DNA of 64,000 bases, from positions 37,362 to 101,361 of the forward strand of contig NW_018405538.1 in the NCBI RefSeq assembly GCF_002113885.1, given 5' to 3'. The position numbers were made by a program, and so were the translations under genes. The notes below the pieces were generated by a model that did no database searches, had not been told where the DNA came from, and was given only the letters and a program-made list of their open reading frames with translations. Positions 35,529 to 57,345 of this stretch are shown piece by piece (the first letter of the stretch is position 1; each line of letters starts with the position of its first letter). This DNA comes from Mizuhopecten yessoensis (taxonomy: Eukaryota).

Positions 35529-35594
35529 ATGCCCCCAAAATTTGTTCGTAACCCTGGAAGTGGTGATTATGCCTCATCTAGAAGTGCAGAGACT
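35529..35594 (+). CDS. VAMP4: VAMP4 coding exon 1 (MPPKFVRNPGSGDYASSRSAET)
   Basis: MPPKF N-terminus characteristic of VAMP4; acceptor ttttaag, donor gtaagt, phase 0. Confidence 0.92.
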
Positions 35595-35861
35595 GTAAGT
35601 ATTTAACTAAATTGTAAATAATCAGTGACATTTATTTAATGTGAACAGCCCTTGACAAATTCACAGTGTAAATAACCTAATTCTTATATAATATAAATAT
35701 AAGAAGGTCACAAGTATTTAATGGAAATCATCAGTGATCATGTATGATCGAAAAAGATTGAGAGGAAATACAGGTTTTAGCTACTAAATGATAAATCAAT
35801 GCTGACAAACACAGAATACAGCATAAAGCAGTAATCTATATTATACAATACACTGTTTCAG

Positions 35862-35908
35862 AGGGCTTTGCTTGAGGCAGGATCTGATGAGGAAGATTTC
35901 TTCTTGCA
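35862..35908 (+). CDS. VAMP4: VAMP4 coding exon 2 (RALLEAGSDEEDFFL)
   Basis: Completes the ETRALL dileucine motif, acidic cluster and FF motif of VAMP4; tttcag/gtaagt sites. Confidence 0.93.
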
Positions 35909-36327
35909 GTAAGTGTATATTAAAACAGTACTACATTACCAGTAAATTGGCTTGCCCTTCCTTTTTCCTAACTGACTTCACTTCTAAAATAGGCCCTTGG
36001 GTCTGTTCCTGTCCCAGATACTTAGTCCCTTTGTCACAACATAGAAATTGTTGAGATTCCCACACTATAACCAAATGTACAATTGACAGTCATGAAGAGA
36101 ATAAATACATGTGCCTAATGCTCGTCCCTTGGGACGCATTCTTTGGGTCATATGATAACTTAAAAACATTTGTTAGCAGGATAAAACTTGTTTTCTATGA
36201 ACGCTTAAATATCCAGATGAGCAATACAGACCCTCTAGGCCTTTTGTTTGAATACATGAATAGGTATTCCAATGTTTATAGTTGGCAATCAAAGGAACTG
36301 ATGTTTTCCCTGTATTCTATGTTTCAG

Positions 36328-36378
36328 AGGTCCCACCGTGAAAACCAATTCACTGCGGGAGGACCCCAAGATGGGCAG
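36328..36378 (+). CDS. VAMP4: VAMP4 coding exon 3 (QGPTVKTNSLREDPKMG)
   Basis: tttcag acceptor, AG|gtagga donor; phase 2-2 fits both neighbours. Confidence 0.88.
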
Positions 36379-39300
36379 GTAGGATTAAGTAGTGTGGACT
36401 TGTGTGACACTAGTCTGATTTATACCATTGGTGTTACTGGGACTAGTCTGATTTATACCATTGGTGTTCCTGGGGGGATTAAGTAGTGTGGACTTGTGTG
36501 ACACTAGTCTGATTTATACCTTTGGTGTTACTGGGAGGATTAAGTAGTGTGGACTTGTGTGACACTAATCTGATTTATACCATTGGTGTTACTGGGACTA
36601 GTCTGATTTATACCATTGTTGTTACTGGGACTAGTCTGATTTATACCATTGGTGTTACTGGGGGGATGAAGTAGTGTGGACTTGTGTGACACTAGTCTGA
36701 TTTATACCATTGGTGTTACAGGGACTAGTCTGATTTATACCATTGGTGTTACTGGTAGGATTAAGTAGTGTTGACTTGTGTGACACTAGTCTGATTTATA
36801 CCATTGGTGTTACTGGGGGGATTAAGTAGTGTGGACTTGTGTGACACTAGTATGATTTATACCATTGGTGTTACTGGGACTAGTCTGAATTATACCATTG
36901 GTGTTACTGGGACTAGTCTGATTTATACCATTGTTGTTACTGGGACTAGTCTGATTTATACCATTGGTGTTCCTGGGGGGATTAAGTAGTGTGGACTTGT
37001 GTGACACTATTCTGATTTATACCATTGGTGTTACTGGGACTAGTCTGAATTATACCATTGGTGTTACTGGGACTAGTCTGATTTGTACCATTGGTGTTAC
37101 TGGGACTAGTCTGATTTATACCATTGGTGTTACTGGGGGGATGAAGTAGTGTGGACTTGTGTGACACTAGTCTGATTTATACCTTTGGTGTTACTGGGAG
37201 GATTAAGTAGTGTGGACTTGTGTGACACTAGGCTGATTTATACCATTGGTGTTACTGGGACTAGCCTGATTTATACCATTGGTGTTACTGGGGGGATTAA
37301 GTAGTGTGGACTTGTGTGACACTAGTATGATTTATACCATTGGTGTTACTGGGACTAGTCTGAATTATACCATTGGTGTTACTGGGACTAGTCTGATTTG
37401 TACCATTGGTGTTACTGGGACTAGTCTGATTTATACCATTGTTGTTACTGGGACTGGTCTGATTTTTACCATTGGTGTTACTGGGACTAGTCTGATTTAT
37501 ACCATTGGTGTGACTGGGACTAGTCTGGTTTATACCATTGGTGTTACTGACACTAGTCTGATTTATACCATTGGTGTTACTGGGGGGATTAAGTAGTGTG
37601 GACTTGTGTGACACTATTCTGATTTATACCATTGGTGTAACTGGTAGGATTAAGTAGTGTGGACTTGTGTGACACTAGCCTGATTTATACCATTGGTTTT
37701 ACTGGGACTAGTCTGCTTTATACCATTGGTGTTTCTGGGACTAGTCTGATTTTTACCATTGGTGTTACTGGCACTCTTGTGTGACACTATTCTGATTTTT
37801 ACCATTGGTGTTACTGTGAGTAGTCTGATTTATACCAGTGGTGTTACTGGGACTAGGCTGGTTTATACCATTGGTGTTTCTGGGACTAGTCTGATTTTTA
37901 CCATTGGTGTTACTGGCACTCTTGTGTGACACTATTCTGATTTTTACCATTGGTGTTACTGGCACTCTTGTGTGACACTATTCTGATTTATACCATTTGT
38001 GTAACTGGTAGGATTTAGTAGTGTGGACTTGTGTGACACTAGACTGATTTATACCATTGGTTTTACTGGGACTAGTCTGACTTATACCATTGGTGTTAGT
38101 GGTAGGATTAAGTAGTGTTTACTTGTGTGACACTATTCTGATTTATACCATTGGCGTTACTGGGACTAGTCTGATTTGTACCATTGGTGTTACTGGGGCT
38201 AGTCTGATTTATACCCTTGGTGTTACTGGGACTAGGCTGATTTATACCATTGGAGTTACTGGGACTAGTCTGACTTATACCATTGGTGTTACCGACACTA
38301 GTCTGATTTATACATTGGTGTTACTGGGAGTAGTCTGATTTATACCAGTGGTGTTACTGGGACTAGTCTGACTTATACCATTGGTGTTACCGACACTAGT
38401 CTGATTTATACCATAGGTGTTACTGGGACTAGCCTGATTTATACCATAGGTGTTACTGGGACTAGGCTGGTTTATACCATTGGTGTTTCTGGGACTAGTC
38501 TGATTTGTACCATTGGTGTTACTGGGAGGATTAAAGAGTGGGGACTTGTTTGACACTAGGCTGATTTATACCATTGGTGTTAGGACTGGGCTGATTTATA
38601 AATGTACCATTGGTGTTACTGGCACTCTTGTGTGACACTATTCTGATTTTTACCATTGGTGTTACTGGGAGGATTAAGTAATATGGACTTGTGTGACACT
38701 ATTCTGATTTATACCATTGGGGTTACTGACACTAGTCTGATTTATGCCATTGGTGTTACTGGGGGGATTACGTAGTGTGGACTTGTGTGACCCTAGTCTG
38801 ATTTATACCCTTGGTGTTACTGGGACTTGTCTGATTTATACCATTGGGGTTACTGGGACTAGTCTGACTTATACCATTGGTGTTACGGGGACTAGTCTGT
38901 TTTATCCCATTGGTGTTACTGGGGCTACTCTGATTTATACCATCGGTGTTACTGGGAGGATTAAGTAATATGGACTTGTGTGACACTAGACTGATTTATA
39001 CCATTGGTTTTACTGGGACTAGTCTGTTTTATCCCATTGGTGTTACTGGGGCTAGTCTGATTTATACCAGTGGTGTTACTGGGACTAGGCTGGTTTATAC
39101 CATTGGTGTTACCGACACTAGTCTGATTTAATACCATTGGTGTTACTGGTGGGATGAAGTAGTGTGGACTTGTATGACACTAGTCTGAGTTATACCATTG
39201 GTGTTAGTGGTAGGATTAAGTAGTGTTTACTTGTGTGACACTATTCTGATTTATACCATTGGTGTAACTGGTAGGATTAAGTAGCGAGGACTTGTGTGAC

Positions 39301-42300
39301 ACTAGCCTGATTTATACCATTGGAGTTACTGGGAGGATTAAGTAATATGGACTTGTGTGACACTAGTCTGATTTATGCCATTGGTGTTACTGGGCGGATT
39401 AAGAAGTGTGGACTTGTGTGACCCTAGTCTGATTTATACCACTGGTGTTACTGGGGGGATGAAGTAGTGTGGACTTGTATGACACTAGTCTGAGTTATAC
39501 CATTGGTGTTACTGGTGGGATGAAGTAGTGTGGACTTGTATGACACTAGTCTGAGTTATACCATTGGTGTTACCGACACTAGTCTGATTTAATACCATTG
39601 GTGTTACTTGGACTAGTCTGATTTATGCCATTGGTGTTAGGACTGGGCTGATTTATAAATGTACCATTGGTGTTACTGGGGCTACTCTGATTTATACCAT
39701 CGGTGTTACTGGGAGGATTAAGTAATATGGACTTGTGTGACACTAGACTGATTTATACCATTGGAGTTACTGGGAGGATTAAAGAGTGGGGACTTGTTTG
39801 ACACTAGGCTGATTTATACCATTGGCGTTACTGGGACTAGTCTGATTTGTACCATTGGTGTTACTGGTAGGATTAAGTAGCGAGGACTTGTGTGACACTA
39901 GACTGATTTATACCATTGGAGTTACTGGGAGGATTAAGTAGGGTGGACTTGTGTGACACTAGCCTGATTTATACCATTGGTTTTACTGGGACTAGTCTGC
40001 TTTATACCATTGGTGTTTCTGGGACTAGTCTGATTTTTACCATTGGTGTTACTGTGAGTAGTCTGATTTATACCAGTGGTGTTACTGGGACTAGGCTGAT
40101 TTATACCATTGGTGTTTCTGGGACTAGTCTGATTTGTACCATTGGTGTTAATGGGAGGATTAAGTAGTGTACTGGGGGGATTAAGTAGTTTGGACTTGTG
40201 TGACACTATTCTGATTTTTACCATTGGTGTTACTGGTAGGATTAAGTAGCGAGGACTTGTGTGACACTATTCTGATTTATACCATTTGTGTAACTGGTAG
40301 GATTTAGTAGTGTGGACTTGTGTGACACTCGTCTGATTTATACCATTGGAGTTACTGGGACTAGTCTGCTTTATACCATTGGTGTTACTGGTGGGATGAA
40401 GTAGTGTGGACTTGTGTGACACTAGACTGATTTATACCATTGGCGTTACTGGGACTAGTCTGATTTGTACCATTGGTGTTACTGGGGCTAGTCTGATTTA
40501 TACCGTTGGTGTTACTGGGAGGATTAAAGAGTGGGGACTTGTTTGACACTAGGCTGATTTATACCATTGGTTTTACTGGGACTAGTCTGTTTTATACCAT
40601 TGGTGTTAGTGGTAGGATTAAGTAGTGTTTACTTGTGTGACACTATTCTGATTTATACCATTGGCGTTACTGGGACTAGTCTGATTTTTACCATTGGTGT
40701 TACTGGCACTCTTGTGTGACACTATTCTGATTTTTACCATTGGTGTTACTGGCACTCTTGTGTGACACTATTCTGATTTATACCATTTGTGTAACTGGTA
40801 GGATTAAGTAGCGAGGACTTGTGTGACACTATTCTGATTTTTACCATTGGTGTTACTGCGGGGATTAAGTAGTGTGGACTGGTGTGACACTAGTCTGATT
40901 TATACCCTTGGTGTTACTGGGACTAGGCTGGTTTATACCATTGGTGTTTCTGGGACTAGTCTGATTTTTACCATTGGTGTTACTGGGCGGATTAAGAAGT
41001 GTGGACTTGTGTGACCCTAGTCTGATTTATACCATTGGTGTTACTGGGACTGGTCTGATTTATAAATGTACCATTGGTGTTACTGGGAGGATTAAGTAGT
41101 GTGGACTTGTGTGNNNNNNNNNNNNNNNNNNNNNNNNNNNNNNNNNNNNNNNNNNNNNNNNNNNNNNNNNNNNNNNNNNNNNNNNNNNNNNNNNNNNNNN
41201 NNNNNNNNNNNNNNNNNNNNNNNNNNNNNNNNNNNNNNNNNNNNNNNNNNNNNNNNNNNNNNNNNNNNNNNNNNNNNNNNNNNNNNNNNNNNNNNNNNNN
41301 NNNNNNNNNNNNNNNNNNNNNNNNNNNNNNNNNNNNNNNNNNNNNNNNNNNNNNNNNNNNNNNNNNNNNNNNNNNNNNNNNNNNNNNNNNNNNNNNNNNN
41401 NNNNNNNNNNNNNNNNNNNNNNNNNNNNNNNNNNNNNNNNNNNNNNNNNNNNNNNNNNNNNNNNNNNNNNNNNNNNNNNNNNNNNNNNNNNNNNNNNNNN
41501 NNNNNNNNNNNNNNNNNNNNNNNNNNNNNNNNNNNNNNNNNNNNNNNNNNNNNNNNNNNNNNNNNNNNNNNNNNNNNNNNNNNNNNNNNNNNNNNNNNNN
41601 NNNNNNNNNNNNNNNNNNNNNNNNNNNNNNNNNNNNNNNNNNNNNNNNNNNNNNNNNNNNNNNNNNNNNNNNNNNNNNNNNNNNNNNNNNNNNNNNNNNN
41701 NNNNNNNNNNNNNNNNNNNNNNNNNNNNNNNNNNNNNNNNNNNNNNNNNNNNNNNNNNNNNNNNNNNNNNNNNNNNNNNNNNNNNNNNNNNNNNNNNNNN
41801 NNNNNNNNNNNNNNNNNNNNNNNNNNNNNNNNNNNNNNNNNNNNNNNNNNNNNNNNNNNNNNNNNNNNNNNNNNNNNNNNNNNNNNNNNNNNNNGCATTG
41901 GTGTGACTGGGACTAGTCTGATTTATACCATTGGTGTTACTGGGAGTAGTCTGATTTATACCATTGGTGTTACTGCGACTAGTCTGATTTATACCATTGG
42001 TGTTACTGACACTACTCTGATTTATACCATTGGTATTATGGGGGGATTAAGTAGTGTGGACTTGTGTGACACTAGTCTGATTTATACCATTGGTGTTGCT
42101 GGGAGTAGTCTGATTTATACCATTGGTGTTACTGGGACTAGTCTGATTTATACCATTGGTGTTACTGACACTACTCTGATTTATACCATTGGTATTAATG
42201 GGGGGATTAAGTAGTGTGGACTTGTGTGACACTAGTCTGATTTATACCATTGGTGTAACTGGGGGGATTAAGTAGTCTGCACTTGTGCGACACTAGTCTG

Positions 42301-45300
42301 ATTTATACCATTGGTGTTACTGGGACTAGTCTGATTTATACCATTGGTGTTACTGACACTAGTCTGATTTATACCATTGGTGTAACTGGGGGGATTAAGT
42401 AGTCTGCACTTGTGTGACACTAGTCTGATTTATACCATTGGTGTTTCTGGGGGGATTAAGTAGGCTGCACTTGTGTGACACTAGTTTTATTTATACCATT
42501 GGTGTAACTGGGGGGTTTAAGTAGTCTGCACTTGTGTGACACTTGTCTGATTTATACCATTTGTTTTAATGGGACTAGTCTGATTTATCCCATTCGTGTT
42601 ACTGACACTAGTCTCATTTATACCATTGGTGTCACTGGCACTAGTCTGATTGATACCATTGGTGTTACTGTGACTAGTCTGATTTATCCCATTGGTTTTA
42701 CTGGGGGGATTAAGTAGGCTGCACTTGTGTGACACTAGTGTGATTTATACCATTGGTGGTTCTGGCACTAGTCTGATTTAAACCATTGGTGTTACTGGTA
42801 CTAGTCTGATTTATACTGTTGGTGTGACTGAGACTAGTCTGATTTAGACCATTGGTGTTACTGGTACTAGTCTAATTTATTCCATTGGTGTAACTGGGGG
42901 GATTAAGTAGGCTGCACTTGTGTGACACTAGTCTGAGTTATACCATTGGTGTTATTGACACTAGTCTGATTTATATCATTGGTGTTACTGACACAAGTCT
43001 GATTTATACCATCGGTGTTACTGGGAGGATTAAGTAGTGTGGACGTGTCTGACACTAGTCTGATTTATTCCATTGGTGTAACTGGGGGGATTAGGTAGTC
43101 TGCACTTGTGTGACACTAGTTTTATTTATACCATTGGTGTGTGACACTAGTCTGATTTCTACCATTTGTGTTACTGGCCCTAGTCTGATTTATACCGTTG
43201 GTGTTACTGGCACTTGTTTGATTTATACCATTGGTTTTACTGGGACTAGTCTAATTTATACCATTGGTGTTAATGACACTAGTCTGATTTATCCCATTCG
43301 TGTTACTGACACTAGTGTGATTTATACCATTGGTGTTGTTACTGACACTAGTCTGACTTATACCATTGGTGTTATTGGGACTAGTCTGTTTTATATCATT
43401 GGTGTTACTGGGAATTGTCTGATTTATTCCATTGGTGTTTCTGGGGGGATTAAGTAGTGTGGACTTATGTGACACTAGTCTGATTTCTACCATTTGTGTT
43501 ACTGGGACTAGTTTTATTTATACCATTGGTGTCACTGGCACTAGTCTGATTGATACCATTGTTGTTACTGTGACTAGTCTGATTTATACTATTGGTGTTG
43601 CTGGGACAAGTCTGATTTATACCATGGGTTTTACTGGGACTAGTCTAATTTATACCATTGGTGTAACTGGCACTAGTCTGATTGATACCATTGGTGTTAC
43701 TGGGAGGATTAAGTAGTGTGGACGTGTCTGACACTAGTCTGATTAATACCATTGGTGTTACTAGCACTAGTCTGATTTATTCCATTGGTTTTACTGGGAC
43801 TAGTCTGATCTATACCATTGGTGTTACGGGGACTAGTCTGATTTAGTCCATTGGTGTTTCTGGGACTAGTCTTATTTATTCCATTGGTGTAACTGGGGGG
43901 TTTAAGTAGTCTGCACTTGTGCGACACTAGTCTGATTTATCCCATTCGTGTTACTGACACTAGTTACTGGCACTAGTCTTATTACCATTGGTGTTACTGT
44001 GACTAGTCTTATTTATACCTGGGACTAGTCTGATTTACACCATTGGTGTTACTGGGATTAGTCTGATTTATACCGTTGATGTTACTGACACTAGTCTGCT
44101 TTATACCATTGGGGTTACTGGGGCTAGGCTGATTTATACCATTGGCGCTACTGACACTAGTCTGATCTATACCATTGGTGTTACAGGCACTAGTCTGATT
44201 TAAACCATTGGTGTTACTGGAACTAGTCTGATTTATGCCATTGGTGTTACTGGGGGGATTAAGTAGGCTGCACTTGTGTGACACTTGTCTGATTTATACC
44301 ATTGGAGTTTCTGACACTAGTCTGATTAATACCATTGGTGTTACTGAGACTAGTCTGATTTATACCAATGGTGTTACTGGGACTAGTTACTGACACTAGT
44401 CTTATTTATTCCATTGGTGTAACTGGGGGGATTAAGTGTCTGCACTTGTGTGACACTAGTATGATTTATACCATTGGTATTAATGGGGGGATTAAGTAGT
44501 GTGGTCTTGTGTGACACTAGTCTGAGTTATACCATTGGTGTTATTGACACTAGTCTGATTTACACCATTGGTGTTACTGGGCCTAGTCTGATTTATACCA
44601 TTTGTTTTAATGGGACTAGTCTGATTTACACCATTGGTGTTACTGGAACTAGTCTGATTTATGCCATTGGTGTTACTGGGTCTAGTCTGATTGATACCAT
44701 TGTTGTTACTGGGACTAGTATGATTTATACCATTGGTTTTACTGGCACTAGTCTGATTGATACCATTGTTGTTACTGTGACTAGTCTGATTTATCCCATT
44801 GGTTTTACTGGGACTAGTCTGATTTATCCCATTCGTGTTACTGACACTAGTCTTATTTATACTATTGGTGTTACTGGGAGGATTAAGTAGTGTGGACGTG
44901 TCTGACACTAGTCTGATTAATACCATTGGTGTTACTTACACTAGTCTGATTTATTCCATTGGTTTTACTGGGGGGATTAAGTAGGCTGCACTTGTGTGAC
45001 ACTTGTCTGATTTATACCATTGCTGTTACTGACACTAGTCCGATTTATACCATTGGTGGTTCTGGCACTAGTCTGATTGATACCATTGGTGTTACTGGCT
45101 AGTCTGATTTATACCAGTGTTGTTACTGGGACTAGTCCGATTTATACCGTTGGTGTTACTGGCACTAGCCTGATTTCTACCATTGGTGTTACTGACACCA
45201 GTCTGATTTATACCATGGGTTTTACTGGGACTAGTCTAATTTATACCATTGGTGTAACTGACACTAGTCTGATCTATACCATTGGTGTTACCGACACTAG

Positions 45301-46810
45301 TCTGATTTATGCCATTGGTGTTACTGGGAATTGTCTGATTTATTCCATTGGTTTTACTGGGACTAGTCTGATTGATACCATTGGTGTTACTAACACTAGT
45401 CTGATTTATAACATTGGTGTTACTGGGACCAGGCTGATTTATACCATTGGAGTTTCTGACACTAGTCTGATTTGTACCATTGGTGTTACTAACACTAGTC
45501 TGATTTATAGCATTGGTGTGACTGGGATTTGTCTGATTTATACCATTGGAGTTTCTGACACTAGTCTGATTCATACCATTGGTGTTACTTACACTAGTCT
45601 GATTTATGCCATTGGTGTAACTGGGGGGATTAAGTGTCTGCACTTGTGTGACACTAGTCTAATTTATACCATTGGTGTGACTGACACTAGTCTGATTTGT
45701 ACCATTGGTGTTACTAACACTAGTCTGATTTATTCCATTGGTTTTACTGGGGGGATTAAGTAGTGTGGTCTTGTGTGACACTAGTCTAATTTATACCATT
45801 GGTGTCACTGGCACTAGTCTGATTGATACCATTGTTGTTACTGGTACTAGTCTGATTTATACTGTTGGTGTGACTGAGACTAGTCTGATTTATATCATTG
45901 GTGTTACTGGGACGAGTCTGATTTAGACCATTGGTGTTACTGGGGGGATTAAGTAGTGTGGACGTGTGTGGAACTAGTCTGATTTATACTGTTGGTGTGA
46001 CTGGGACTAGTCTTATTTATCCCATTGGTGTTACTGACACGAGTCTGATTTATACCATTTGTTTTAATGGGACTAGTCTGATTTAGTCCATTGGTGTTTC
46101 TGGGGGGATTAAGTAGGCTGCACTTGTGTGACACTAGTGTGATTTCTACCATTGGTGTTACTGGTACTAGTCTGATTTATACTATTGGTGTTACTGACAC
46201 CAGTCTGATTTATACCATGGGTGTTACTGACACTAGCCTGATTTATACCATTGGTGGTTCTGGCACTAGTCTGATTTAAACCATTGGTGTTACTGGAACT
46301 AGTCTGATTTATGCCATTGGTGTTACTGGGACTAGTCTGATTTATACTGTTGGTGTGACTGGGACTAGTCTGATTTATACCATTGGTGTTACTGACACTA
46401 GTTTGATTGATACCATTGGTGTTAATGGCACTAGTCTGATTTATTCCATTGGTTTTACTGGCACTAGTCTGATTTAAACCATTTGTGTTACTGGGACTAG
46501 AATGATTTATACCATTGATGTTACTGACCCTAGTCTGATTTATACCTTTGGTGTTACTGGGAGGGAAGGAGCATGCAAATAGTCTGATTTATACAATTGG
46601 TGTTACTGACACCAGTCTGATTTATACCACTGGTGTTACTGACACTAGTCTGATTATACCATTGGGGTTACTGGCACTAGTCTGATTTATACCGTTGGTG
46701 TTACTGGCACTTGTTTGATTTATACCATTGGTGTTACTGGGACTAGTCTGATTTATACCGTTGGTGTTACTGGGAGGATTATACCATTGGTGTTACTGGG
46801 AGGAAAGGAG
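36379..46810. repeat. Intronic satellite C: 33-nt unit gggactagtctgatttataccattggtgttact plus a 61-nt unit adding ggattaagtagtgtggacttgtgtgac
   Basis: Direct periodicity; starts at the first base of the VAMP4 intron; contains an assembly gap. Confidence 0.97.
41114..41894. other. Assembly gap (N run) inside satellite C
   Basis: Run of N. Confidence 0.99.
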
Positions 46811-46986
46811 CATGCAAATAGTGCCGGTTTTAAAGATTTTGAAAATAAAAAGGACAACTGATTCACCTTTTGGTGGAAATTTCTCAGGAAATACCATTAC
46901 ATGTATAATGATTAACAGAACCAGCATATGTGTTTATGTAACATAGGTATCTTTTAGTTATAGCCCTTCTCCCCGGGTCTACTTTG

Positions 46987-47080
46987 CTGACATGTGTTGT
47001 TTACCTGACAGACATGTGTTGTTCACCTGACTGACATGTGTTGTTTACCTGACTGACATGTGTTGTTTACCTGGCTGACA
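46987..47080 (+). repeat. 23-nt tandem repeat (ctgacatgtgttgtttacctga-) x4 in the branch-point region before VAMP4 exon 4
   Basis: Direct repeats; each contains CTGAC. Confidence 0.85.
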
Positions 47081-47101
47081 TCTTGTTTGAATACTTGACA
47101 G

Positions 47102-47202
47102 ACTCCAGAACCAGGTGGATGATGTTGTTGGCATTATGAAGGATAACATGGGTAAAGTGATTGACCGCGGTGATCGCCTGGAGGATCTACAGGACAAATC
47201 TG
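47102..47202 (+). CDS. VAMP4: VAMP4 coding exon 4, R-SNARE motif (RLQNQVDDVVGIMKDNMGKVIDRGDRLEDLQDKS)
   Basis: Synaptobrevin-type motif with zero-layer Arg (IDRGD); ttgacag acceptor, G|gtaagt donor. Confidence 0.96.
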
Positions 47203-47380
47203 GTAAGTTACAGGGGGATCTACAGGACAAATCTCGTAAGTTCCAGGGGGATCTACAGGACAAATCTGGTAGGTTACAGGGGGATCTACAGGACAAATCT
47301 CGTAAGTTCCAGGGGGATCTACAGGACAAATCTGGTAAGTTACAGGGGGATCTACAGGACAAATCTGGTAAGTTACAGGG
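47183..47380 (+). repeat. 33-nt x6 tandem duplication of the exon-4 end plus 5' splice site
   Basis: ggatctacaggacaaatctg|gtaagttacaggg; GT at 47203, 47236, 47269, 47302, 47335 and 47368. Confidence 0.96.
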
Positions 47381-47721
47381 TGTACTTATAACAAATGTCA
47401 CGTCTGTCAGGTTTGATACAATATGTATAATCATGATATATGTGCTTTATATTTCTGCACTGATACATACATCTTCTTTACCCTTTGGTGTGCTGTGAAG
47501 GGGGAAAATTTGGCCTTGGTATAATTTTGCTCTGTTCAAAGTGAAGGGAAATTACATGTAGTTATATAATTATATGAAAAAACAGCACACGGACATACAA
47601 ATGTAGTTAACAGTATAAGTGTGTATACATAGGTGAATATCACAATGGTTAAGTTTTTCTTGAATTAATAGTCAGAAAAAAGGTTATTTTGCAATATTTC
47701 CTTAAAGTTTTTAATTCTTTT

Positions 47722-48049
47722 TACTTTCTACAATTCAGACAGCTTGGCTGGTAACTCTGATCTACTTTCTACATTTCAGACAGCTTGGCTGGTAACTCTG
47801 ATTTACTTTCTACATTTCAGACAGCTTGGCTGGTAACTCTGATTTACTTTCTACACTTCAGACAGCTTGGCTGGTAACTCTGATTTACTTTCTACATTTC
47901 AGACAGCTTGGCTGGTAACTCTGATTTACTTTTTACATTTCAGCCAGCTTGGCTGGTAACTCTGATTTACGTTCTACATTTCAGATATCTTGACTGGTAA
48001 CTCTGATTTACTTTCTACATTTCAGACAACTTGGCTGGTAACTCTGATT
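47722..48049 (+). repeat. 41-nt x8 tandem duplication of the 3' splice site plus exon-5 start
   Basis: tactttctacatttcag|acagcttggctggtaactctgatt; AGs end at 47738, 47779, 47820, 47861, 47902, 47943, 47984 and 48025. Confidence 0.96.
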
Positions 48050-48105
48050 TGTTTCGATCACGTTCTCGTGACCTGAGAAAAAACATGTGGTGGAAAAATT
48101 GCAAG
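48026..48105 (+). CDS. VAMP4: VAMP4 coding exon 5 (DNLAGNSDLFRSRSRDLRKNMWWKNCK)
   Basis: C-terminal SNARE half and juxtamembrane WWKNCK; donor gtaata. Confidence 0.94.
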
Positions 48106-48269
48106 GTAATAATTTGGTTAATCCGTATTTAAGGTAATTCTGTTTGATTCATTTTAAGGTAATGGTGTCAGCACATCCGTTTATGATACTAGTTTTACTT
48201 CAATGATGTTGATCTTTATTTATCTCAGACCAAAGTCAACAGAGCCCAACATGTCTTTGTAATAAACAC

Positions 48270-51200
48270 TCGGGATACCCCACTCCTCCTGGGGATACCC
48301 ACTCCATAGCTGTTTGTGTGACAACACCTGGGATACCCACTTCACAATTGCTGTTTGTGTGACAACACCTGGGATACCCACTCCATAGTTGCTGTTTGAG
48401 TGACAATACCTGGGATACCCACTCCATAGCTGTTTGTGTGACGACACCTGGGATACCCACTCCATATTGGCTGTTAGTGTGACAACACCTGGGATACCCA
48501 CTTCACAATTGCTGTTCGTGTGACCACACCTGGGATACCCCCTCCATAGTTGCTGTTTGTGTGACAACACCTGTGATACCCAATCCATAGTGGCTCTTTG
48601 TGTGATAACACCTGGGATCCCCACTCCATAGTTGCTGTTTGTGTGATAACCCCTGGGATACCCACTCCATAGTGGCTGTTTGTCTGACAACACCTGGGAT
48701 ACCCACTCCATACTGGCTGTTTGTGTGACAACACCTGGGATACCCACTCCATAGTTGCTGTTTGTGTGACAACACCTGTGATACCCACTCCATAGTGGCT
48801 CTTTGTGTGATAACACCTGGGATACCCACTCCATAGTTGCTGTTTGTGTGACAACACCTGGGATACCCACTCCATAGTGGCTGTTTGTGTGACAACACCT
48901 GGGATACCCACTCCATAGTGGCTGTTTGTGTGACAACACCTGGGATACCCACTCCATAGTGGCTGTTTGTGTGACAACACCTGGGATACCCACTCCATAG
49001 TGGCTGTTTGTGTGACAACACCTGGGATACCCACTCCATAGTGGCTGTTTGTGTGACAACACCTGGGATACCCACTCCATAGTGGCTGTTTGTGTGACAA
49101 CACCTGGGATACCCACTCCATAGTTGCTGTTTGTGTGACAACACCTGGGATACCCACTCCATAGTGGCTGTTTGTGTGACAACACCTGGGATACCCACTC
49201 CATAGTTGCTGTTTGTGTGACAACACCTGGGATACCCACTCCATAGTGGCTGTTTGTGTGACAACACCTGGGATACCCACTCCATAGTTGCTGTTTGTGT
49301 GACAACACCTGGGATACCCACTCCATAGTGGCTGTTTGTGTGACAACACCTGGGATACCCACTCCATAGTTGCTGTTTGTGTGACAACACCTGGGATACC
49401 CACTCCATAGTGGCTGTTTGTGTGACAACACCTGGGATACCCACTCCATAGTTGCTGTTTGTGTGACAACACCTGGGATACCCACTCCATAGTGGCTGTT
49501 TGTGTGACAACACCTGGGATACCCACTCCATAGTTGCTGTTTGTGTGACAACACCTGGGATACCCACTCCATAGTGGCTGTTTGTGTGACAACACCTGGG
49601 ATACCCACTCCATAGTTGCTGTTTGTGTGACAACACCTGGGATACCCACTCCATAGTGGCTGTTTGTGTGACAACACCTGGGATACCCACTCCATAGTTG
49701 CTGTTTGTGTGACAACACCTGGGATACCCACTCCATAGTGGCTGTTTGTGTGACAACACCTGGGATACCCACTCCATAGTTGCTGTTTGTGTGACAACAC
49801 CTGGGATACCCACTCCATAGTGGCTGTTTGTGTGACAACACCTGGGATACCCACTCCATAGTAGCTGTTTGTGTGACAACACCTGGGATACCCACTCCAT
49901 AGTGGCTGTTTTTGTGATAACACCTGGGATACCCACTCCATAGTTGCTGTTTGTGTGACAACACCTGGGATACCCACTCCATAGTGGTTGTTTGTGTAAC
50001 GATACCTGGGATACCCCACTCCATAGTTGCTGTTTGTGTGACAACACCAGGGATACCCCACTCCATAGTTGCTGTTTGTGTGACAACCCCTGGGATACCC
50101 CACTCCATAGTTGCTGTTTGTGTGACAACCCCAGGGATACCCCACTCCATAGTTGCTGTTTGTTTGACAACCCCTGGGATACCCCACTCCATAGTTGTTT
50201 GTGTGACAATACCTGGGATACCCCACTCCATAGTTGCTGTTTGTGTGGCAACACCTGGGAAACCCCACTCCATAGTTGTTTGTGTGAGAACACCTGGGAT
50301 ACCCACTCCATAGTTGTTTGTGCGACAACACCTGGGATACCCACTCCATAGCTGTTTGTGTGACAACACCTGGGATACCCACTCCATAGTTGCTGTTTGT
50401 GTGACAATACCTGGGATACCCCACTTCCACGTTGCTGTTTGTGTGACAACACCTGGGATACCCCACTTCGACGTTGCTGTTTTTGTGACAACACCTGGGA
50501 TACCCCACTTCCACGTTGCTGTTTGTGTGACAACACCTGGGATACCCCACTCCATAGTTGCTATTTGTGTGACAACACCTGGGATACCTCACTCCATAGT
50601 TGCTATTTGTGTGACAACACCTGGGAAACCCCACTCCATAGTTGTTTGTGTGACAACACCTGGGATACCCACTCCATAGTTGTTTGTGTGACAACACCTG
50701 GGATACCCACTCCATAGCTGTTTGTGTGACAACACCTGGGATACCCCACTCCATAGTTGTTTGTGTGACAATACCTGGGATACCCCACTCCATAGTTGCT
50801 GTTTGTGTGACAACACCTGGGATACCCCACTTCCACGTTGCTGTTTGTGTGACAATACCTGGGATACCCCACTTCCACGTTGCTGTTTGTGTGACAACAC
50901 CTGGGATACCCCACTTCCACGTTGCTGTTTTTGTGACAACACCTGGAATACCCCACTTCCACGTTGCTGTTTGTGTGACAATACCTGGGATACCCCACTT
51001 CCACATTGCTGTTTGTGTGACAACACCTGGGATACCCCACTTCCCCGTTGCTGTTTGTGTGACAATACCTGGTATACCCCTCTTTCACCTTGCTGTTTGT
51101 GCGACAATACCTGAGATACCCCACTTCCACGTTGCTGTTTGTGTGACAACACTTGGGATACCCCACTCCATAGTTGCTGTTTGTGTGACAATACCTGGGA

Positions 51201-54200
51201 TTCCCCACTCCATAGTTGCTGTTTGTGTGACAACACCTGGGATACCCACTCCATAGCTGTTTGTGTGACAACACCTGGGATTCCCCACTTCCCCGTTGCT
51301 GTTTGTGTGACAACACTTGGGATACCCCACTCCATAGTTGCTGTTTGGGTGACAATACCTGGGATACCCAACTCCATAGTTGCTGTTTGTGTGACACCAC
51401 CTTGGATACCCACTCCATAGCTGTTTGTGTGACAACACCTGGGATCCCCACTCCATAGCTGTTTGTGTGACAACACCTGGGATCCCCACTCCATAGCTGT
51501 TTGTGTGACAACACCTGGGATTCCCCACTTCCCCGTTGCTGTTTGTGTGACAATACCTGGGATACCCCTCTTCCACGTTGCTGTTTGTGTGACAATACCT
51601 GGTATACCCCTCTTCCATGTTGCTGTTTGTGTGACAATACCTGGGATACCCCCCTTCCACGTTGCTGTCTGTGTGACAATACCTGGTATACCCCTCTTCC
51701 ACGTTGCTGTTTGTGTGACAATACCTGGTATGCCCCTCTTCCACGTTGCTGTTTGTGTGACAATACCTGGGATTCCCAACTCCTCATTTGCTGTTTGTGT
51801 GACAACACTCAGGATACCCCAAGCCCCACCGGGATACCCCACTTCCACATTGCTGTTTGTGTGACAATACCTGGGATACCCCTCTTTCACGTTGCTGTTT
51901 GTGTGCCAACACCTGGGATACCTCACTTCCACATTTGCTGTTTGTATGACAATACCTCGGATACCCCAATCCCCACTGGGATACCCACTCCACAGTTGCT
52001 GCTTGTGTGACAACACCTGGGATACCCCAATCCCCACTGGGATACCCACTCCACGGTTGCTGTTTGTGTGACAACACCTGGGATACCCCACTCCATAGTT
52101 GCTGTTTCTCTGACAATACGTGGGATATCCCTCTTCTACATTTGCTGTGTGTGTGACAATACCTGGGATCCCTTACTTCCACATTGCTGTTTGTGTAACA
52201 GCACCTGGGATACTCCACTCCACATTTTCCACGTTGCTGTTTGTGTGACAACACTTGGGATACCCCACTCCATAGTTGCTGTTTGTGTGACAATCCCTGG
52301 GATACCCCACTCCATAGTTGCTGTTTGTGTGTCAACGATACCTGGGATACCCCACTCCATAGTTGCTGTTTCTCTGACAATACGTGGGATATCCCTCTTC
52401 TACATTTGCTGTGTGTGTGACAATACCTGGGATCCCTTACTTCCACATTGCTGTTTGTGTAACAGCACCTGGGATACTCCACTCCACATTTGCTGTTTGT
52501 GTGACAACACTTGGGATACCCCAATCCCCACTGGGATACCCACTCCACAGTTGCTGCTTGTGTGACAACACCTGGGATACCCCAATCCCCACTGGGATAC
52601 CCACTCCATAGTTGCTGTTTGTGTGACAATACCTGGGATGCCCCTCTTCCACGGTGCTGTTTGTGTGACAATACCTGGTATACCCCTCTTCCATGTTGCT
52701 GTTTGTGTGAGAATACCTGGGATACCCCACTCCATAGTTGCTGTTTGAGTGACAATACCTGGGATACCCCACTCCCTAGTTGCTGTTTGTGTGACAATAC
52801 CTGGGATACCCCACTTCCACGTTGCTGTTTGTGTGACAATACCTGGTATGCCCCTCTTCCACGTTGCTGTTTGTGTGACAATACCTGGGATTCCCCTACT
52901 TCCACGTTGCTGTTTGTGTGACAACAATACCCCACTCCATAGTTGCTGTTTGTGTGACAATACCTGGGATACCCCACTCCATAGTTGCTGTTTCTCTGAC
53001 AATACATGGGATATCCCTCTTCTACATTTGCTGTGTGTGTGACAATACCTGGGATCCCTTACTTCCACATTGCTGTTTGTGTAACAGCACCTGGGATACT
53101 CCACTCCACATTTGCTGTTTGTGTGACAACACTTGGGATACCCCAATCCCCACTGGGATACCCACTCCACAGTTGCTGTTTGTGTGACAACACCTGGGAT
53201 ACCCCAATCCCCACTGGGATACCCACTCCACGGTTGCTGTTTGTGTGACAACACCTGGGATACCCCACTTCCACATTTGCTGTTTGTAAGACAATACGCT
53301 GGATACCCCAATCCCCCCCGGGATACCCCACTTCCATGTTGCTGTTTGTGTGACAATACATGGGATACCCCACTTCCACATTTGCTGTTTGTATGACAAT
53401 ACCTCAGATACCCAATCCCCACTGGGATACCCACTCCATAGTTGCTGTTTGTGTGACAATACCTGGGATACCCCTCTTCCACGTTACTGTTTTGTGTGAC
53501 AATACCCGGGATTCCCAACTCCATAGTTGCTGTTTGTGTGACAACGCCTGGGATCCCTCACTTCCACATTTGCTGTTTGTGTGACAACACCTGGGATACC
53601 CCACTCTATAGTTGCTGTTTGTGTGACAATACCTGGGATACCCCTCTTTCACGTTGCTGTTTGTGTGCCAACACCTGGGATACCTCACTTCCACATTTGC
53701 TGTTTGTATGACAATACCCCGGATACCCCAATCCCCACTGGTATACCCACTCCACGGTTGCTGTTTGTGTGACAACACCTGGGATACCCCAATCCCCACT
53801 GGGATGCCCCACTTCCACATTGCTGTTTGTGTGACAACACCTGGGATACCCCACTTCCACATTTGCTGTTTGTAAGACAATACGCTGGATACCCCAATCC
53901 CCTCCGGGATACCCCACTTCCATGTTGCTGTTTGTGTGACAACACCTGGGATACCCCACTTCCACATTTGCTGTTTGTATGACAATACCTCGGATACCCC
54001 AATCCCCACTGGGATACCCACTCCATAGTTGCTGTTTGTATGACAATACCCCGGATACCCTAATCCCCACTGGGATACCCACTCCACGGTTGCTGTTTGT
54101 GTGATAATACCTGGGATACCCCTCTTTCACGTTGCTGTTTGTGTGCCATCGCCTGGGATACCTCACTTCCACATTTGCTGTTTGTATGACAATGCCTCGG

Positions 54201-54312
54201 ATGCCCCAATCCCCACTGGGATACCCACTCCACGGCTGCTGTTTGTGTGAGAATACCAGGGATACCTCACTTCCACATTGCAGTTTGTTTGACAACACCT
54301 GGGATACCCCAC
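48270..54312. repeat. Intronic satellite D: 41-nt unit gggatacccactccatagtggctgtttgtgtgacaacacct with 38-44 nt variants
   Basis: Direct periodicity; homogeneous core ~48830-49860, increasingly diverged toward 54300. Confidence 0.97.
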
Positions 54313-54656
54313 TGCACATTTATTTGCTCTACAGGATGCCCCCCGCCCCTCCCCCTCACTGGACCCTTTACTACAGCAAAGTTTGGCTGGACAATGAAGG
54401 CAGCTTTACAAGGTTTTACTGTATTTTCTATCAAATCTACGATTTTGTGCTACAGGGTATATTTTTCTCATGTTTGATAGATGATTCCAGTCATCTTTTG
54501 TGATAGTATAACGGGTACCTACCGGTGTGCCCAGTTTGACCGATCATCAAGCTAAACGTAGTACCTTGACTGGACCTAGTAATGCTGGAATAGTGTACAC
54601 CTCCGTTCCAAGACTTTCAGTTTCCCTTGATACTAATAACTATGTTCTCTTTGTAG

Positions 54657-54708
54657 ATGAAGATAATCTTGGCACTGGTGGTTGTTATCATACTGGCAGT
54701 TATTATCA
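54657..54708 (+). CDS. VAMP4: VAMP4 coding exon 6, transmembrane anchor (MKIILALVVVIILAVII)
   Basis: ctctttgtag acceptor, gtaagt donor, hydrophobic segment in the expected phase. Confidence 0.92.
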
Positions 54709-55513
54709 GTAAGTAATTAGTGTCTGAAGGGCCACGTGGGCTATTGCAGTCTGTTGTCATCCGTTGTTTGCCTGTATTTTTAACTTTTTCAATGGACAAC
54801 TTCTTCTCATAACCACTCTGCTTATTACATCCAACTTTAGTAGGAAGTATTCCTTGACGATGTTGAGACATAGTCAAGGTCATAGTGACCCCTAGCAGTG
54901 TAGTAATTCCTTTGACCTTGACATATATTTAAGGTCATAGGGATTAGATCTGTTAAAATGCTCATACAACCTCTTCTAACTAACCAAATCATATAGTATG
55001 TTGATATTTGTCCATAAGCTTGCTGGCATGAAGTGTCCAAATGATTGTGAAAAAAATGGTCATGGCCCAAATCCAAGGTCACCCGAGTCTAATTTGTTAA
55101 ACACTAAACAACTTCTTCTGAAGAACCAAAGGAGTAGAGTCATAGAATGTGAAAAGTAGATTGCTGGAATGGTGTGCTACAAAGTTTTTGAAAAGAAGTG
55201 ACCTTGATCAATATTTAGAGTCAGCGTTCAAATTTATCAAAACACTCAAAATGACTTCAAAAGAGTACTGGGAAACCTATTAACATGATCTTAAAATATA
55301 CGGTACAGTGATTTTAAACAAAGTGAAAAATTTAACTATGTAGCACAATAAACAGTATCTGTAACAACAGTTTATGAACTGTATAATTATGTATGCCCAT
55401 GTTACTTGAGGCAGGGATGGGCAATGGGTAATATGTTTGCCTTGTCTGTCTTTCCGTCACATTCCTTGGCATCACGATCTGCCCTACTTCTACGGCTACT
55501 AAAAATGGAATTT

Positions 55514-55663
55514 AACAAAAGATAGTTAGCTTGTGATCACTCTAACAGAAGATAGTTATCTTGTGATCACTCTAACAGAAGATAGTTATCTTGTGATCAC
55601 TCTAACTGAAGATAGTTAGCTTGTGATCACTCTAACAGAAGATAGTTAGCTTGTGATCACTCT
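55514..55663. repeat. 30-nt x5 tandem repeat aacagaagatagttagcttgtgatcactct
   Basis: Direct repeats. Confidence 0.9.
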
Positions 55664-55825
55664 ATAGATGAAGCTAGGACATGTTAATTGTGAGTCTTGC
55701 TCACTTTCTCTTTTTAGATATCCAGTAAATAATTGAAATACATTAAAATAATTCACGAAGTACCAATAATTAATATACAGTGCAATAATTAAATTATGAC
55801 GTGGAGTTAATATTTCTGTTATCAG

Positions 55826-55863
55826 TTCCTATCATCATGAGTCACACAGGAAACGATGGCTAG
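55826..55863 (+). CDS. VAMP4: VAMP4 last coding exon (IPIIMSHTGNDG*)
   Basis: ttctgttatcag acceptor, phase 1 fits, stop TAG 55861-55863, AATAAA at 56059; total CDS 435 nt. Confidence 0.8.
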
Positions 55864-57345
55864 GAGGTGATGAATGCGTACTGGAGAGCTGTGATACAAG
55901 AAGCGGGTGGAGGCGTGCTGGAGAGCTGTGACGTCAGATCTGTTACCTTAACTTCCCTGATTTATCTCCCTTCTGTAGCCCTGTAGGGTCTTTTCTTTTT
56001 GTAAATATATCTATAAGCTTTATTTAACATGTGATGGAAGTTTTTATTTGTTTCTTATAATAAAATTATGCTTTTCAGTTGTTTTTCCTGACATGTAGAC
56101 CAATTACACTTAATCCTGTTCATTTCCCGTTCCTTTTGCTTCTATTATAATTGAAAAATTCTTCTAGTTCAGGAAAATAACAATGATCAAATGATATTGA
56201 ACGAATATTTATCAGTTCTATTGCTAAATGCATTGAAGCAAATGCTCTAAAGAAACGTTACAATTGGCCCGAAGCATTGATCTACATAGGCGTTATTTCG
56301 TGCAATTTGTCCATTTTGATTGTAAAGTAATTTGAATGTATTTATTGTGAAGATTATTGTGTATATTTATGTTAAATGTATTGATGTACTATCAGAAAAG
56401 TATATGAACCAATTAAGGTGTTATCGCTTCTAACTGTTTCAAAGGTTTCCATTTTTGTCATGTGATTAATGTTTTTGTACTACTTACTGTGTTCACAGTA
56501 GCATAGTATGTGGCATATGTCAGTCTTTGTTTTGTAGGTGAATGATGTTTTTTAAAGAAAGTATGTGCCAATGTCAACTCCTGATGAAACAATCCATTGT
56601 CATGATATGTGTTGTAATGGATGAGTGGACAGCAGATATCTGTCATGTTTACAAATATATGTGTAATACATGTTGAAGACCGATTCCCAAAAAAACATTG
56701 ATACAACTCAATGTTTACTTTCGTGCTACATCATTATTTTCATGTGTAGGTGTTAATGGAAATGTAGGAACTGCAATACCATAATGAATCAGTCGGATGT
56801 GAGGAAAGGTATAAAACACGATTTTTATTTAAGTGACAAATATGTCTGAGCTATGTAAAAAAAGCTTTAATTGGATGACGTCGTAATATCTCATTTCAAG
56901 TTTGGGTTGAAATTTTCAATTATTCTTTAATAAAAATGGCCATACTTACATAATTCAATATGCAAATTACCGGAACCTTTTTGATATACCTGGTATATGA
57001 AATATTAAGCATTTATTCGTTTTTAGATAAATCATGAATTAAAAATTTGGTGTCGAGGACGTTAAACCCCCCAAAAAACTAAAATCTGTGTCAGCTAGTA
57101 TGTAGACAGTTACAAAGGGGCGATTTTCTGTAACTATGAGGATGAAAGATTTAAAATATTGTGTACTATTTTGTCATCAAAAGCATGACAAAGTCGCAGG
57201 TGATTTGTCCGATAAGATACACGTGACAATAAAAATGAAACAATGTTCGATGTGTTTGTTATCTCCCTAGGAATTTTTAAGTTAATTTGCATTGTGATAA
57301 GCCTCACTTTTCTGATATGGCAAGCCTCTGCCTGATCACACTGAA

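What the first reader, a model, noticed from the sequence alone, without database searches (positions are those of the whole stretch)
47183..47380. In-frame donor ladder could add 11-aa steps to the VAMP4 SNARE helix
Seen: six 33-nt units, no stops, each with a GT in the same phase (five gtaagt, one gtaggt); copies 5 and 6 match the first in local context. Using donor n inserts (n-1) x (G/R)(K/R)(L/F)QGDLQDKS C-terminal to the zero-layer Arg, up to 55 aa, with the TM anchor kept. Established: SNARE zippering depends on layer register and distance to the membrane. Inference: either elongated, possibly dominant-negative isoforms exist, or strong proximal-donor selection operates.
Basis: partly seen in the sequence, partly recalled or inferred. 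Interest (0 to 1): 0.75.

Follow-up and report, generated by a model that had tools for sequence, protein, structure and literature searches.

The report
Silent splice-donor repeats in scallop VAMP4
In the Yesso scallop VAMP4 gene, the end of one exon plus the start of the next intron has been copied six times head to tail, but RNA reads show only the first copy's splice site in use, so this is a silent intron repeat of a known kind and not a source of longer SNARE proteins.

Summary
Positions 47183-47380 are six exact-phase 33-nt units (TRF score 361, 93% match). Each unit carries the last 20 nt of VAMP4 exon 4 and the first 13 nt of intron 4, with a GT in the same phase. Units 1, 5 and 6 are identical, and the coding frame stays open throughout.

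The gene is Mizuhopecten yessoensis VAMP4-like. The annotated 144-aa protein matches the exons one by one.

The isoform idea is not supported. In two raw RNA-seq runs and one RNA contig set, the only exon 4-exon 5 joint is 47202 to 48026 (37 split reads, plus a contig at depth 198). Depth over the nearest decoy units is zero. The products would be in frame, so nonsense-mediated decay cannot be hiding them. Neither NCBI isoform carries the ladder, and two searches of the large protein collection found no protein that does.

The junction is single-copy in three other scallops, so the array is young. It occurs once in the genome.

This is a junction minisatellite like human F7 IVS7, IFI6, CBS and the amphioxus "mirages", with the most upstream donor selected. 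The scan has noted the same kind of repeat on other DNA of this genome (ANAPC4, MCM9, an IFI27-like gene). It is a new member of a known kind, of low to moderate interest.

The parts
47102..47202 (+). VAMP4 exon 4 (101 nt). It encodes the N-terminal half of the SNARE motif, up to ...LEDLQDKS. Its last base is the first base of a split codon.
   Evidence: Pfam Synaptobrevin positions 8-40, E 3e-10. PDB VAMP4 2nps_A, E 3.9e-9. RNA depth is confined to 47099-47202. Matches the annotated protein P0122.
47203..47208 (+). Authentic 5' splice site, G|GTAAGT. It is the most upstream of the six and the only one seen in use.
   Evidence: The joint 47201/2 to 48025/6 (GT..AG) has 27 reads in X22, 10 reads in X23 and one X5 contig at depth 198.
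47183..47380 (+). 33-nt x 6 tandem array. Each unit is the last 20 nt of exon 4 plus the first 13 nt of intron 4. The unit order is A B A' B A A, with signs of a 66-nt higher-order step.
   Evidence: It occurs only once in the 988-Mb assembly.
47236..47373 (+). Five silent decoy donors, with GT at 47236 (C|GTAAGT), 47269 (G|GTAGGT), 47302 (C|GTAAGT), 47335 and 47368 (both G|GTAAGT, identical to the real site from -20 to +13).
   Evidence: Sequence. No joint from any of them, and zero RNA depth over 47222-47313.
47203..48025 (+). Intron 4 (823 nt). A decoy-donor array sits at its 5' end and a decoy-acceptor array at its 3' end.
   Evidence: The read laying joint 'skips 823, GT..AG'.
47720..48050 (+). 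41-nt x 8 array that re-copies the intron 4 / exon 5 acceptor junction. Only the last acceptor (AG at 48024-48025) is used.
   Evidence: TRF, sequence, joint end point.
48026..48106 (+). VAMP4 exon 5, the C-terminal half of the SNARE motif (DNLAGNSDLF...WWKNCK).
46987..47081 (+). 22-nt x 4.3 array just upstream of the exon 4 acceptor, with a CTGAC branch-point-like motif. It is single-copy in Pecten maximus and Ylistrum balloti.
   Evidence: TRF. Orthologous sequence.
35529..55862 (+). Whole VAMP4-like coding region: exons 35529-35594, 35862-35908, 36329-36379, 47102-47202, 48026-48106, 54657-54708 and about 55826-55862 (stop TAG at 55860-55862). The 3' UTR runs to at least 57000.
   Evidence: tblastn exon by exon with scallop VAMP4 proteins. 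Sequence. The loose ends of the reads name exon 3 and exon 6. Twenty runs hold 95-97% of the sampled words of 55790-57000.

Best explanation
The array is a young tandem duplication of the exon 4 / intron 4 junction of Mizuhopecten yessoensis VAMP4, specific to that lineage. It is an exon-edge minisatellite, or 'mirage'. Because the splicing machinery uses the most upstream of the six donors, units 2-6 and the intronic 13 nt of unit 1 lie inside intron 4. They are removed with the intron, and the mRNA and protein are the ordinary 144-aa VAMP4.

Shown: the array exists, only donor 1 is joined to exon 5, and the junction is single-copy in three other scallops.

Inferred: the decoys are silent for the same reason as in human F7 IVS7. 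Selection of the first competent donor downstream of the exon, by a 5'-to-3' first-come rule or by exon definition, pre-empts identical sites further down. Point changes at -1 or +4 in the three nearest decoys help. The G5 run that follows each donor may also mark the downstream units as intron.

The array has no demonstrated function. It persists because it is harmless as long as donor 1 wins.
For: Array anatomy. Gene identity: Synaptobrevin / VAMP4. NCBI VAMP4-like isoform X2 of M. yessoensis (P0122, 144 aa) matches every exon.

RNA: there is a single joint, 47201/2 to 48025/6, with 27 + 10 split reads in two raw RNA-seq runs and up to 72 nt on the shorter side, so the reads reach into unique exon sequence. 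One RNA contig at depth 198 from another study shows the same joint. Depth is 0 over 47222-47313, against about 40x and 14x on exon 4. All five alternative products would be in frame, so nonsense-mediated decay cannot explain their absence.

Proteins: no protein with the ladder appears among candidates of 48-154 aa or 74-236 aa in 5.8 billion clusters. The five members of the scallop cluster are 143-185 aa and all have the S|D junction.

Age: the junction is single-copy in Pecten maximus, Ylistrum balloti and Argopecten irradians.

Not a dispersed repeat: only the self-match is found in the genome.

Precedent: in F7 IVS7 only the most upstream of 5-9 identical donors is used, and the decoys are competent but out-competed (PMC1557585). 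Amphioxus mirages do not disturb normal splicing (PMC3087553).

All three distinct substitution events in the array fall at donor positions -1, +4 and +8.
Against: Only three RNA samples from two studies were laid, and their tissues are unknown. With 0 of 37 junction reads (or 0x against about 54x depth), combined decoy use up to roughly 5-8% is not excluded.

Joints supported by fewer than 3 reads are not listed by the tool.

One X22 read lies partly on about 47338-47373 and remains unexplained. It is most simply pre-mRNA, or an allele with a different unit order.

The selection rule (scanning or exon definition, G-runs) is carried over from mammalian work and was not tested in a mollusc.

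Three substitution events are too few to show selection (chance about 0.04 for all three falling in -3..+8).
Confidence: 0.85

Rival explanations
1. Alternative in-frame donors are used at a low level, or only in particular tissues, stages or stresses. This would give VAMP4 with 11-55 extra residues between SNARE layers +3 and +4, possibly fusion-incompetent or dominant-negative.
For: Donors 5 and 6 are identical to the used donor from -20 to +13, and every product would be in frame with the TM anchor kept. Human IFI6 and CBS do use the second and third repeated donors (PMC1557585 introduction).
Against: There are no reads or contigs from any decoy donor, and depth over the array is zero in three RNA data sets. 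Neither NCBI isoform has the ladder. No such protein is in the large protein collection, which includes assemblies of public runs. The nearest decoys (2-4), the ones used in the IFI6 and CBS precedents, are each weakened at -1 or +4.
Confidence: 0.07
2. The decoy donors are functional RNA elements. They would recruit U1 snRNP downstream of the real site, or act as G-run enhancers that raise the efficiency or fidelity of exon 4 recognition, and the array would be kept by selection.
For: Each unit has a near-consensus U1 site and a G5 run. Two decoys are perfectly conserved copies.
Against: Three other scallops splice the same conserved junction without any array. The surrounding 1.1 kb holds two more species-specific arrays, and two introns of the gene are filled with satellites, which fits a high neutral rate of tandem duplication. 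No RNA structure is predicted (z = +0.64). There is no Rfam match.
Confidence: 0.05
3. The array, or its copy number, is an artefact of a short-read assembly.
For: The assembly is fragmented (82,659 contigs). Arrays of 33-nt units are hard to size with short reads.
Against: An independent 2025 contig set (X16) has the one-period cyclic unitig at 55.8x against 9.6x for the flank, and a contig that joins the last unit to unique intron sequence. This fits about 6-7 near-identical units. Copy number and unit order may differ between individuals, but the array is real.
Confidence: 0.02

Closest known systems
Human F7 intron 7 37-bp VNTR (Borensztajn et al. 2006, PMC1557585)
   Same: The first unit spans the exon/intron boundary. 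It is followed by several donors identical in sequence, and only the most upstream one is used. Some of the alternative products would be in frame yet are not made. No masking RNA structure was found there either.
   Different: The unit here is 33 nt rather than 37 nt, so every decoy is in frame. The host is a mollusc SNARE gene. Three of the five decoys carry point changes in the donor motif. Whether the decoys are competent was not tested here.
Human IFI6 (6-16) 12-nt minisatellite and CBS exon/intron-border VNTR (Turri et al. 1995, PMC306954; Yang et al. 2000; both as cited in PMC1557585)
   Same: A tandem repeat of the exon-end plus donor provides a ladder of in-phase donors.
   Different: In IFI6 and CBS the second and third donors are used constitutively and give longer isoforms. 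Here no decoy use is seen. In CBS a substitution in the second repeat is reported to prevent multiple splicing, which resembles the weakened decoys 2-4 here.
Amphioxus 'mirages' (Adh3, globins; PMC3087553)
   Same: [quoted passage not shown] They are unstable in length and do not interfere with normal splicing. This VAMP4 intron has both a donor array and an acceptor array.
   Different: The phylum differs (Mollusca rather than Cephalochordata) and the units are shorter than those in the globin cases (150-160 bp). Somatic instability was not examined here.

Membership tests
Exon/intron-boundary minisatellite (mirage / F7 IVS7 type) | Tandem array whose first unit contains the authentic exon-intron junction | tested here: met
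   Unit 1 (47183-47215) holds the last 20 nt of exon 4 and the donor used by the RNA reads.
Exon/intron-boundary minisatellite (mirage / F7 IVS7 type) | Downstream units retain splice-site-like sequences (pseudo-sites) | tested here: met
   Five decoys: two identical to the real site, two with C at -1, one GTAGGT.
Exon/intron-boundary minisatellite (mirage / F7 IVS7 type) | Normal mRNA is made from the outermost (authentic) site while the pseudo-sites stay silent | tested here: met
   There is a single joint, 47202 to 48026, in 37 reads and one contig, with zero depth on the array. The annotated proteins are canonical.
Exon/intron-boundary minisatellite (mirage / F7 IVS7 type) | Length or composition polymorphism between individuals (VNTR behaviour) | tested here: inconclusive
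   The X16 cyclic unitig depth is 5.8x the flank, where the reference unit order predicts 1.9x. This suggests a more homogeneous or longer array, but contigs cannot size it.
Exon/intron-boundary minisatellite (mirage / F7 IVS7 type) | Recent local origin, not part of a dispersed repeat family | tested here: met
   It occurs once in the genome. The junction is single-copy in Pecten maximus, Ylistrum balloti and Argopecten irradians.
Alternative-donor ladder that makes isoforms (IFI6 / CBS type) | More than one of the repeated donors is used in mature mRNA | tested here: not met
   No joint from any decoy. No ladder-bearing protein on record.
VAMP4 (R-SNARE, Synaptobrevin family): identity of the host gene | Synaptobrevin SNARE motif with a zero-layer Arg, a C-terminal TM anchor, and an N-terminal di-Leu plus acidic cluster | tested here: met
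   Pfam PF00957 on exons 4 and 5. The best solved relative is VAMP4 2nps_A, with Arg aligned in ...DRGDRL.... Exons 6-7 are hydrophobic. Exon 2 encodes LLEAGSDEEDFF. That this last motif is a VAMP4 hallmark comes from my own knowledge. NCBI names the protein VAMP4-like.

The most novel reading that the evidence does not exclude
Splice junctions in scallops, as in amphioxus, may be preferred seeds for minisatellites through an unknown mutational process linked to splicing or transcription. Selection would then disable the nearest in-frame decoy donors. Several observations prompt this. Intron 4 of this gene carries a donor-junction array and an acceptor-junction array in M. yessoensis. P. maximus has its own donor-like array in the same intron, and Ylistrum has an array carrying the start of exon 6. 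In the ladder, all three substitution events hit the donor motif. A rough count gives 2-3 junction-spanning arrays among about 8 in the gene, against about 0.5 expected from random local duplication. That count is an inference and is subject to ascertainment bias. My data do not test the idea genome-wide.
Probability: 0.2. Interest if true: 0.55.

Novelty: new member of a known kind. Interest (0 to 1): 0.25.

Why it matters
Six donors, three of them identical over 33 nt and all in frame, form a natural competition experiment for 5' splice-site choice in a mollusc. The outcome is that the most upstream site wins and decoys stay below about 5-8%. This extends the rule worked out on human F7 IVS7 to a distant animal, and here nonsense-mediated decay cannot blur the reading.

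For annotation there is a practical warning. In this repeat-rich genome, open in-frame donor ladders at exon edges should not be read as isoform generators without RNA evidence.

For VAMP4 biology nothing changes. The protein is the ordinary 144-aa R-SNARE.

Tried and rejected
1. RNA structure masking the decoys: the fold of 47102-47420 is no more stable than shuffles (z = +0.64).

2. Part of a dispersed satellite or mobile element: only the self-match is found in the 988-Mb assembly.

3. Derivation from the neighbouring 33-nt satellite of intron 3, which has the same period: the rotated local alignment is not significant (about 0.08 of shuffles reach the score).

4. Elongated isoforms on record: two word-index protein searches with the read-through frame and the cluster listing found none.

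5. Known structured RNA: no Rfam match in 46000-49000.

6. An open frame as evidence of coding: three of six frames are open across the array, so it carries no weight.

Exons were searched one at a time by reference and compared with database proteins. No structure prediction of the hypothetical elongated protein was run, because the RNA data give no sign that it exists.

Full report
**Observation.** The stretch 47183-47380 is a clean tandem array. TRF gives period 33, 6.0 copies, 93% matches, no indels and score 361. The repeat finder gives six copies at a spacing of exactly 33. The six units start at 47183, 47216, 47249, 47282, 47315 and 47348. Units 1, 5 and 6 are identical. Units 2 and 4 share two changes, C for G at donor position -1 and C for A at +8. 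Unit 3 has G for A at +4 (GTAGGT). A 66-nt shift matches better than a 33-nt shift (97% against 91%), so part of the array grew by a two-unit step (order A B A' B A A). GT dinucleotides lie at 47203, 47236, 47269, 47302, 47335 and 47368. In the exon frame the array has no stop and reads as 11-residue steps. One small addition: donors 2 and 4 would also turn the split codon from Asp (G|AC) into His (C|AC).

**Is the open frame meaningful?** No. One period in three is a multiple of three, and three of the six frames are open across the array.

**The host gene.** Exon 4 (47102-47202) encodes positions 8-40 of Pfam Synaptobrevin (E 3e-10). Its best solved relative is VAMP4 (2nps_A, E 3.9e-9). The window is contig C2211 of a 988-Mb assembly in 82,659 contigs. 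The protein collection holds VAMP4-like isoforms X1 (185 aa) and X2 (144 aa) of Mizuhopecten yessoensis. Compared exon by exon, X2 matches the window at 35529-35594, 35862-35908, 36329-36379, 47102-47202, 48026-48106, 54657-54708 and about 55826-55862. X1 differs only by an N-terminal extension. By alignment to VAMP4 and, from established knowledge, to the layers of VAMP2, the Arg in ...DRGDRL... is the zero layer.

**Which donor is used?** I found runs with the 3' UTR and laid four of them on 46900-48250: two raw RNA-seq runs of 2026 (X22, X23), one RNA contig set from another study (X5) and one contig set of about 688 Mb that is probably genomic (X16).
- The only joint reported is 47201/2 to 48025/6 (GT..AG, skipping 823 nt).
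- It is supported by 27 reads in X22 and 10 in X23, with up to 72 nt on the shorter side, well into the unique part of exon 4, and by the X5 contig at depth 198.
- RNA depth is about 40x (X22) and 14x (X23) on exon 4, and exactly 0 over 47222-47313. Any transcript using donors 2-6 would have to cover that stretch.
- The loose ends before exon 4 and behind exon 5 spell the end of exon 3 and the start of exon 6, which confirms the gene model.
- All five alternative products are in frame, so nonsense-mediated decay cannot hide them.
- With 0 of 37 junction reads, or 0x against about 54x, combined decoy use above roughly 5-8% is excluded in these samples.
- One X22 read lies partly on about 47338-47373 and runs unspliced across donor 6. 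It is most simply pre-mRNA, or an allele with a different unit order.

**Other records of the protein.** Two searches of the large protein collection used the read-through frame, with candidate lengths of 48-154 aa and 74-236 aa. They returned only canonical VAMP4 proteins at about 61 bits. The scallop cluster has five members of 143-185 aa, all with the canonical ...DKS|DNLA... junction.

**Is the array real DNA?** Yes. X16 contains a 63-nt unitig laid on 47318-47380. Its 33 words are exactly one period of a perfect 33-nt array. Its depth is 55.8 against 9.6 for the adjoining unique contig 47351-47792. The reference unit order predicts a mean multiplicity of only 1.9 for those words, whereas 5.8 fits about 6-7 near-identical units. 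This suggests that unit composition or number differs between individuals, but contigs cannot settle it.

**Origin.** The array occurs once in the genome. The orthologous exon 4 / intron 4 junction is conserved and single-copy in Pecten maximus (L011), Ylistrum balloti (L012) and Argopecten irradians (L014). The duplication therefore arose in the Mizuhopecten lineage. It sits in an exceptionally repeat-prone neighbourhood:
- a 22-nt x 4.3 array just upstream of the exon 4 acceptor, single-copy in the relatives;
- a 41-nt x 8 array that re-copies the exon 5 acceptor junction;
- satellites of about 10 kb and 6 kb that fill introns 3 and 5.

The relatives carry junction-like arrays of their own. 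P. maximus has a 40-nt x 35 array in intron 4 with GTAAGG/GTAAGT motifs. Ylistrum has a 33-nt x 17 array carrying the first 15 nt of exon 6.

**Mechanism.**
- Shown: donor 1 is the only one used, and everything downstream of 47202 in the array is intron.
- Inferred: the decoys are silent by the rule established for human F7 IVS7. There, 5-9 identical donors follow the authentic one, and only the most upstream is used. The decoys are competent but do not compete, no RNA structure or intronic silencer explains this, and in-frame alternatives are still not made (PMC1557585). Here too no structure is predicted (z = +0.64).
- Two features may help. The three nearest decoys are weakened at -1 or +4, and all three substitution events in the array fall within donor positions -1 to +8. 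The chance of that is about 0.04, so it is suggestive only. A substitution in the second repeat of the CBS VNTR is reported to prevent multiple splicing. Every donor is followed by a G run, which in vertebrates marks intron sequence and favours the upstream site. That last point comes from my own knowledge and was not tested here.

**Comparison with known systems.** This is a member of the class of exon/intron-boundary minisatellites: human F7 IVS7, IFI6 (6-16) and CBS and the amphioxus 'mirages' (PMC3087553). It behaves like F7, with silent decoys, and unlike IFI6 and CBS, where the second and third donors are used. Earlier notes of this scan report the same kind of array in other genes of this genome (ANAPC4, MCM9, an IFI27-like gene). 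I used them as leads only.

**Verdict.** The isoform reading is not supported, and the 'strong proximal-donor selection' branch is supported. The array is a new member of a known kind, of low to moderate interest. What remains open is whether scallop splice junctions seed minisatellites more often than chance.

Noticed in passing
window 47720-48050: A 41-nt x 8 array re-copies the intron 4 / exon 5 acceptor junction (a pyrimidine-rich stretch, CAG, and the first 22 nt of exon 5). All 37 split reads and the X5 contig land on the last acceptor (48025|48026). The upstream copies are silent.
   Followed up: partly
L011 5799-7193 (Pecten maximus intron 4): A 40-nt x 35 array full of GTAAGG/GTAAGT motifs starts about 60 nt into intron 4. 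Its unit is significantly similar to the M. yessoensis 41-nt acceptor-array unit (local score 21, reached by 0 of 300 shuffles). The two intron 4 arrays may share an origin.
   Followed up: partly
L012 6789-7347 (Ylistrum balloti): A 33-nt x 17 array has units that begin with the first 15 nt of VAMP4 exon 6. It lies about 650 nt upstream of the real exon 6. This looks like another junction-derived array in the same gene of another scallop.
   Followed up: no
window 46987-47081: A 22-nt x 4.3 array with a CTGAC branch-point-like motif lies directly upstream of the exon 4 acceptor region. The same 22-mer is single-copy in P. maximus and Ylistrum.
   Followed up: partly
window 47165: C/T difference in exon 4 (GAC to GAT, synonymous Asp). 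About half of the RNA reads in X22 carry T (20 of 41), as do 10 of 14 in X23. It is probably a common SNP.
   Followed up: no
window 36380-47101 and 48107-54656: Intron 3 (about 10.7 kb, with an N gap at 41114-41894) is almost entirely satellite built on 33-, 61- and 94-nt units. Intron 5 (about 6.5 kb) is almost entirely 41/42-nt satellite. The same gene spans only about 7-9 kb in Ylistrum and Argopecten.
   Followed up: no
window 47216-47314: All three distinct substitution events that separate the array's units lie in the donor motif (-1, +4, +8) and weaken decoys 2-4, while decoys 5-6 are intact. This could reflect selection against use of the nearest decoys, or chance (about 0.04).
   Followed up: partly
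upstream of window 35529: NCBI isoform X1 (185 aa) adds 41 N-terminal residues read from sequence upstream of the usual start codon. I did not check RNA support for it.
   Followed up: no
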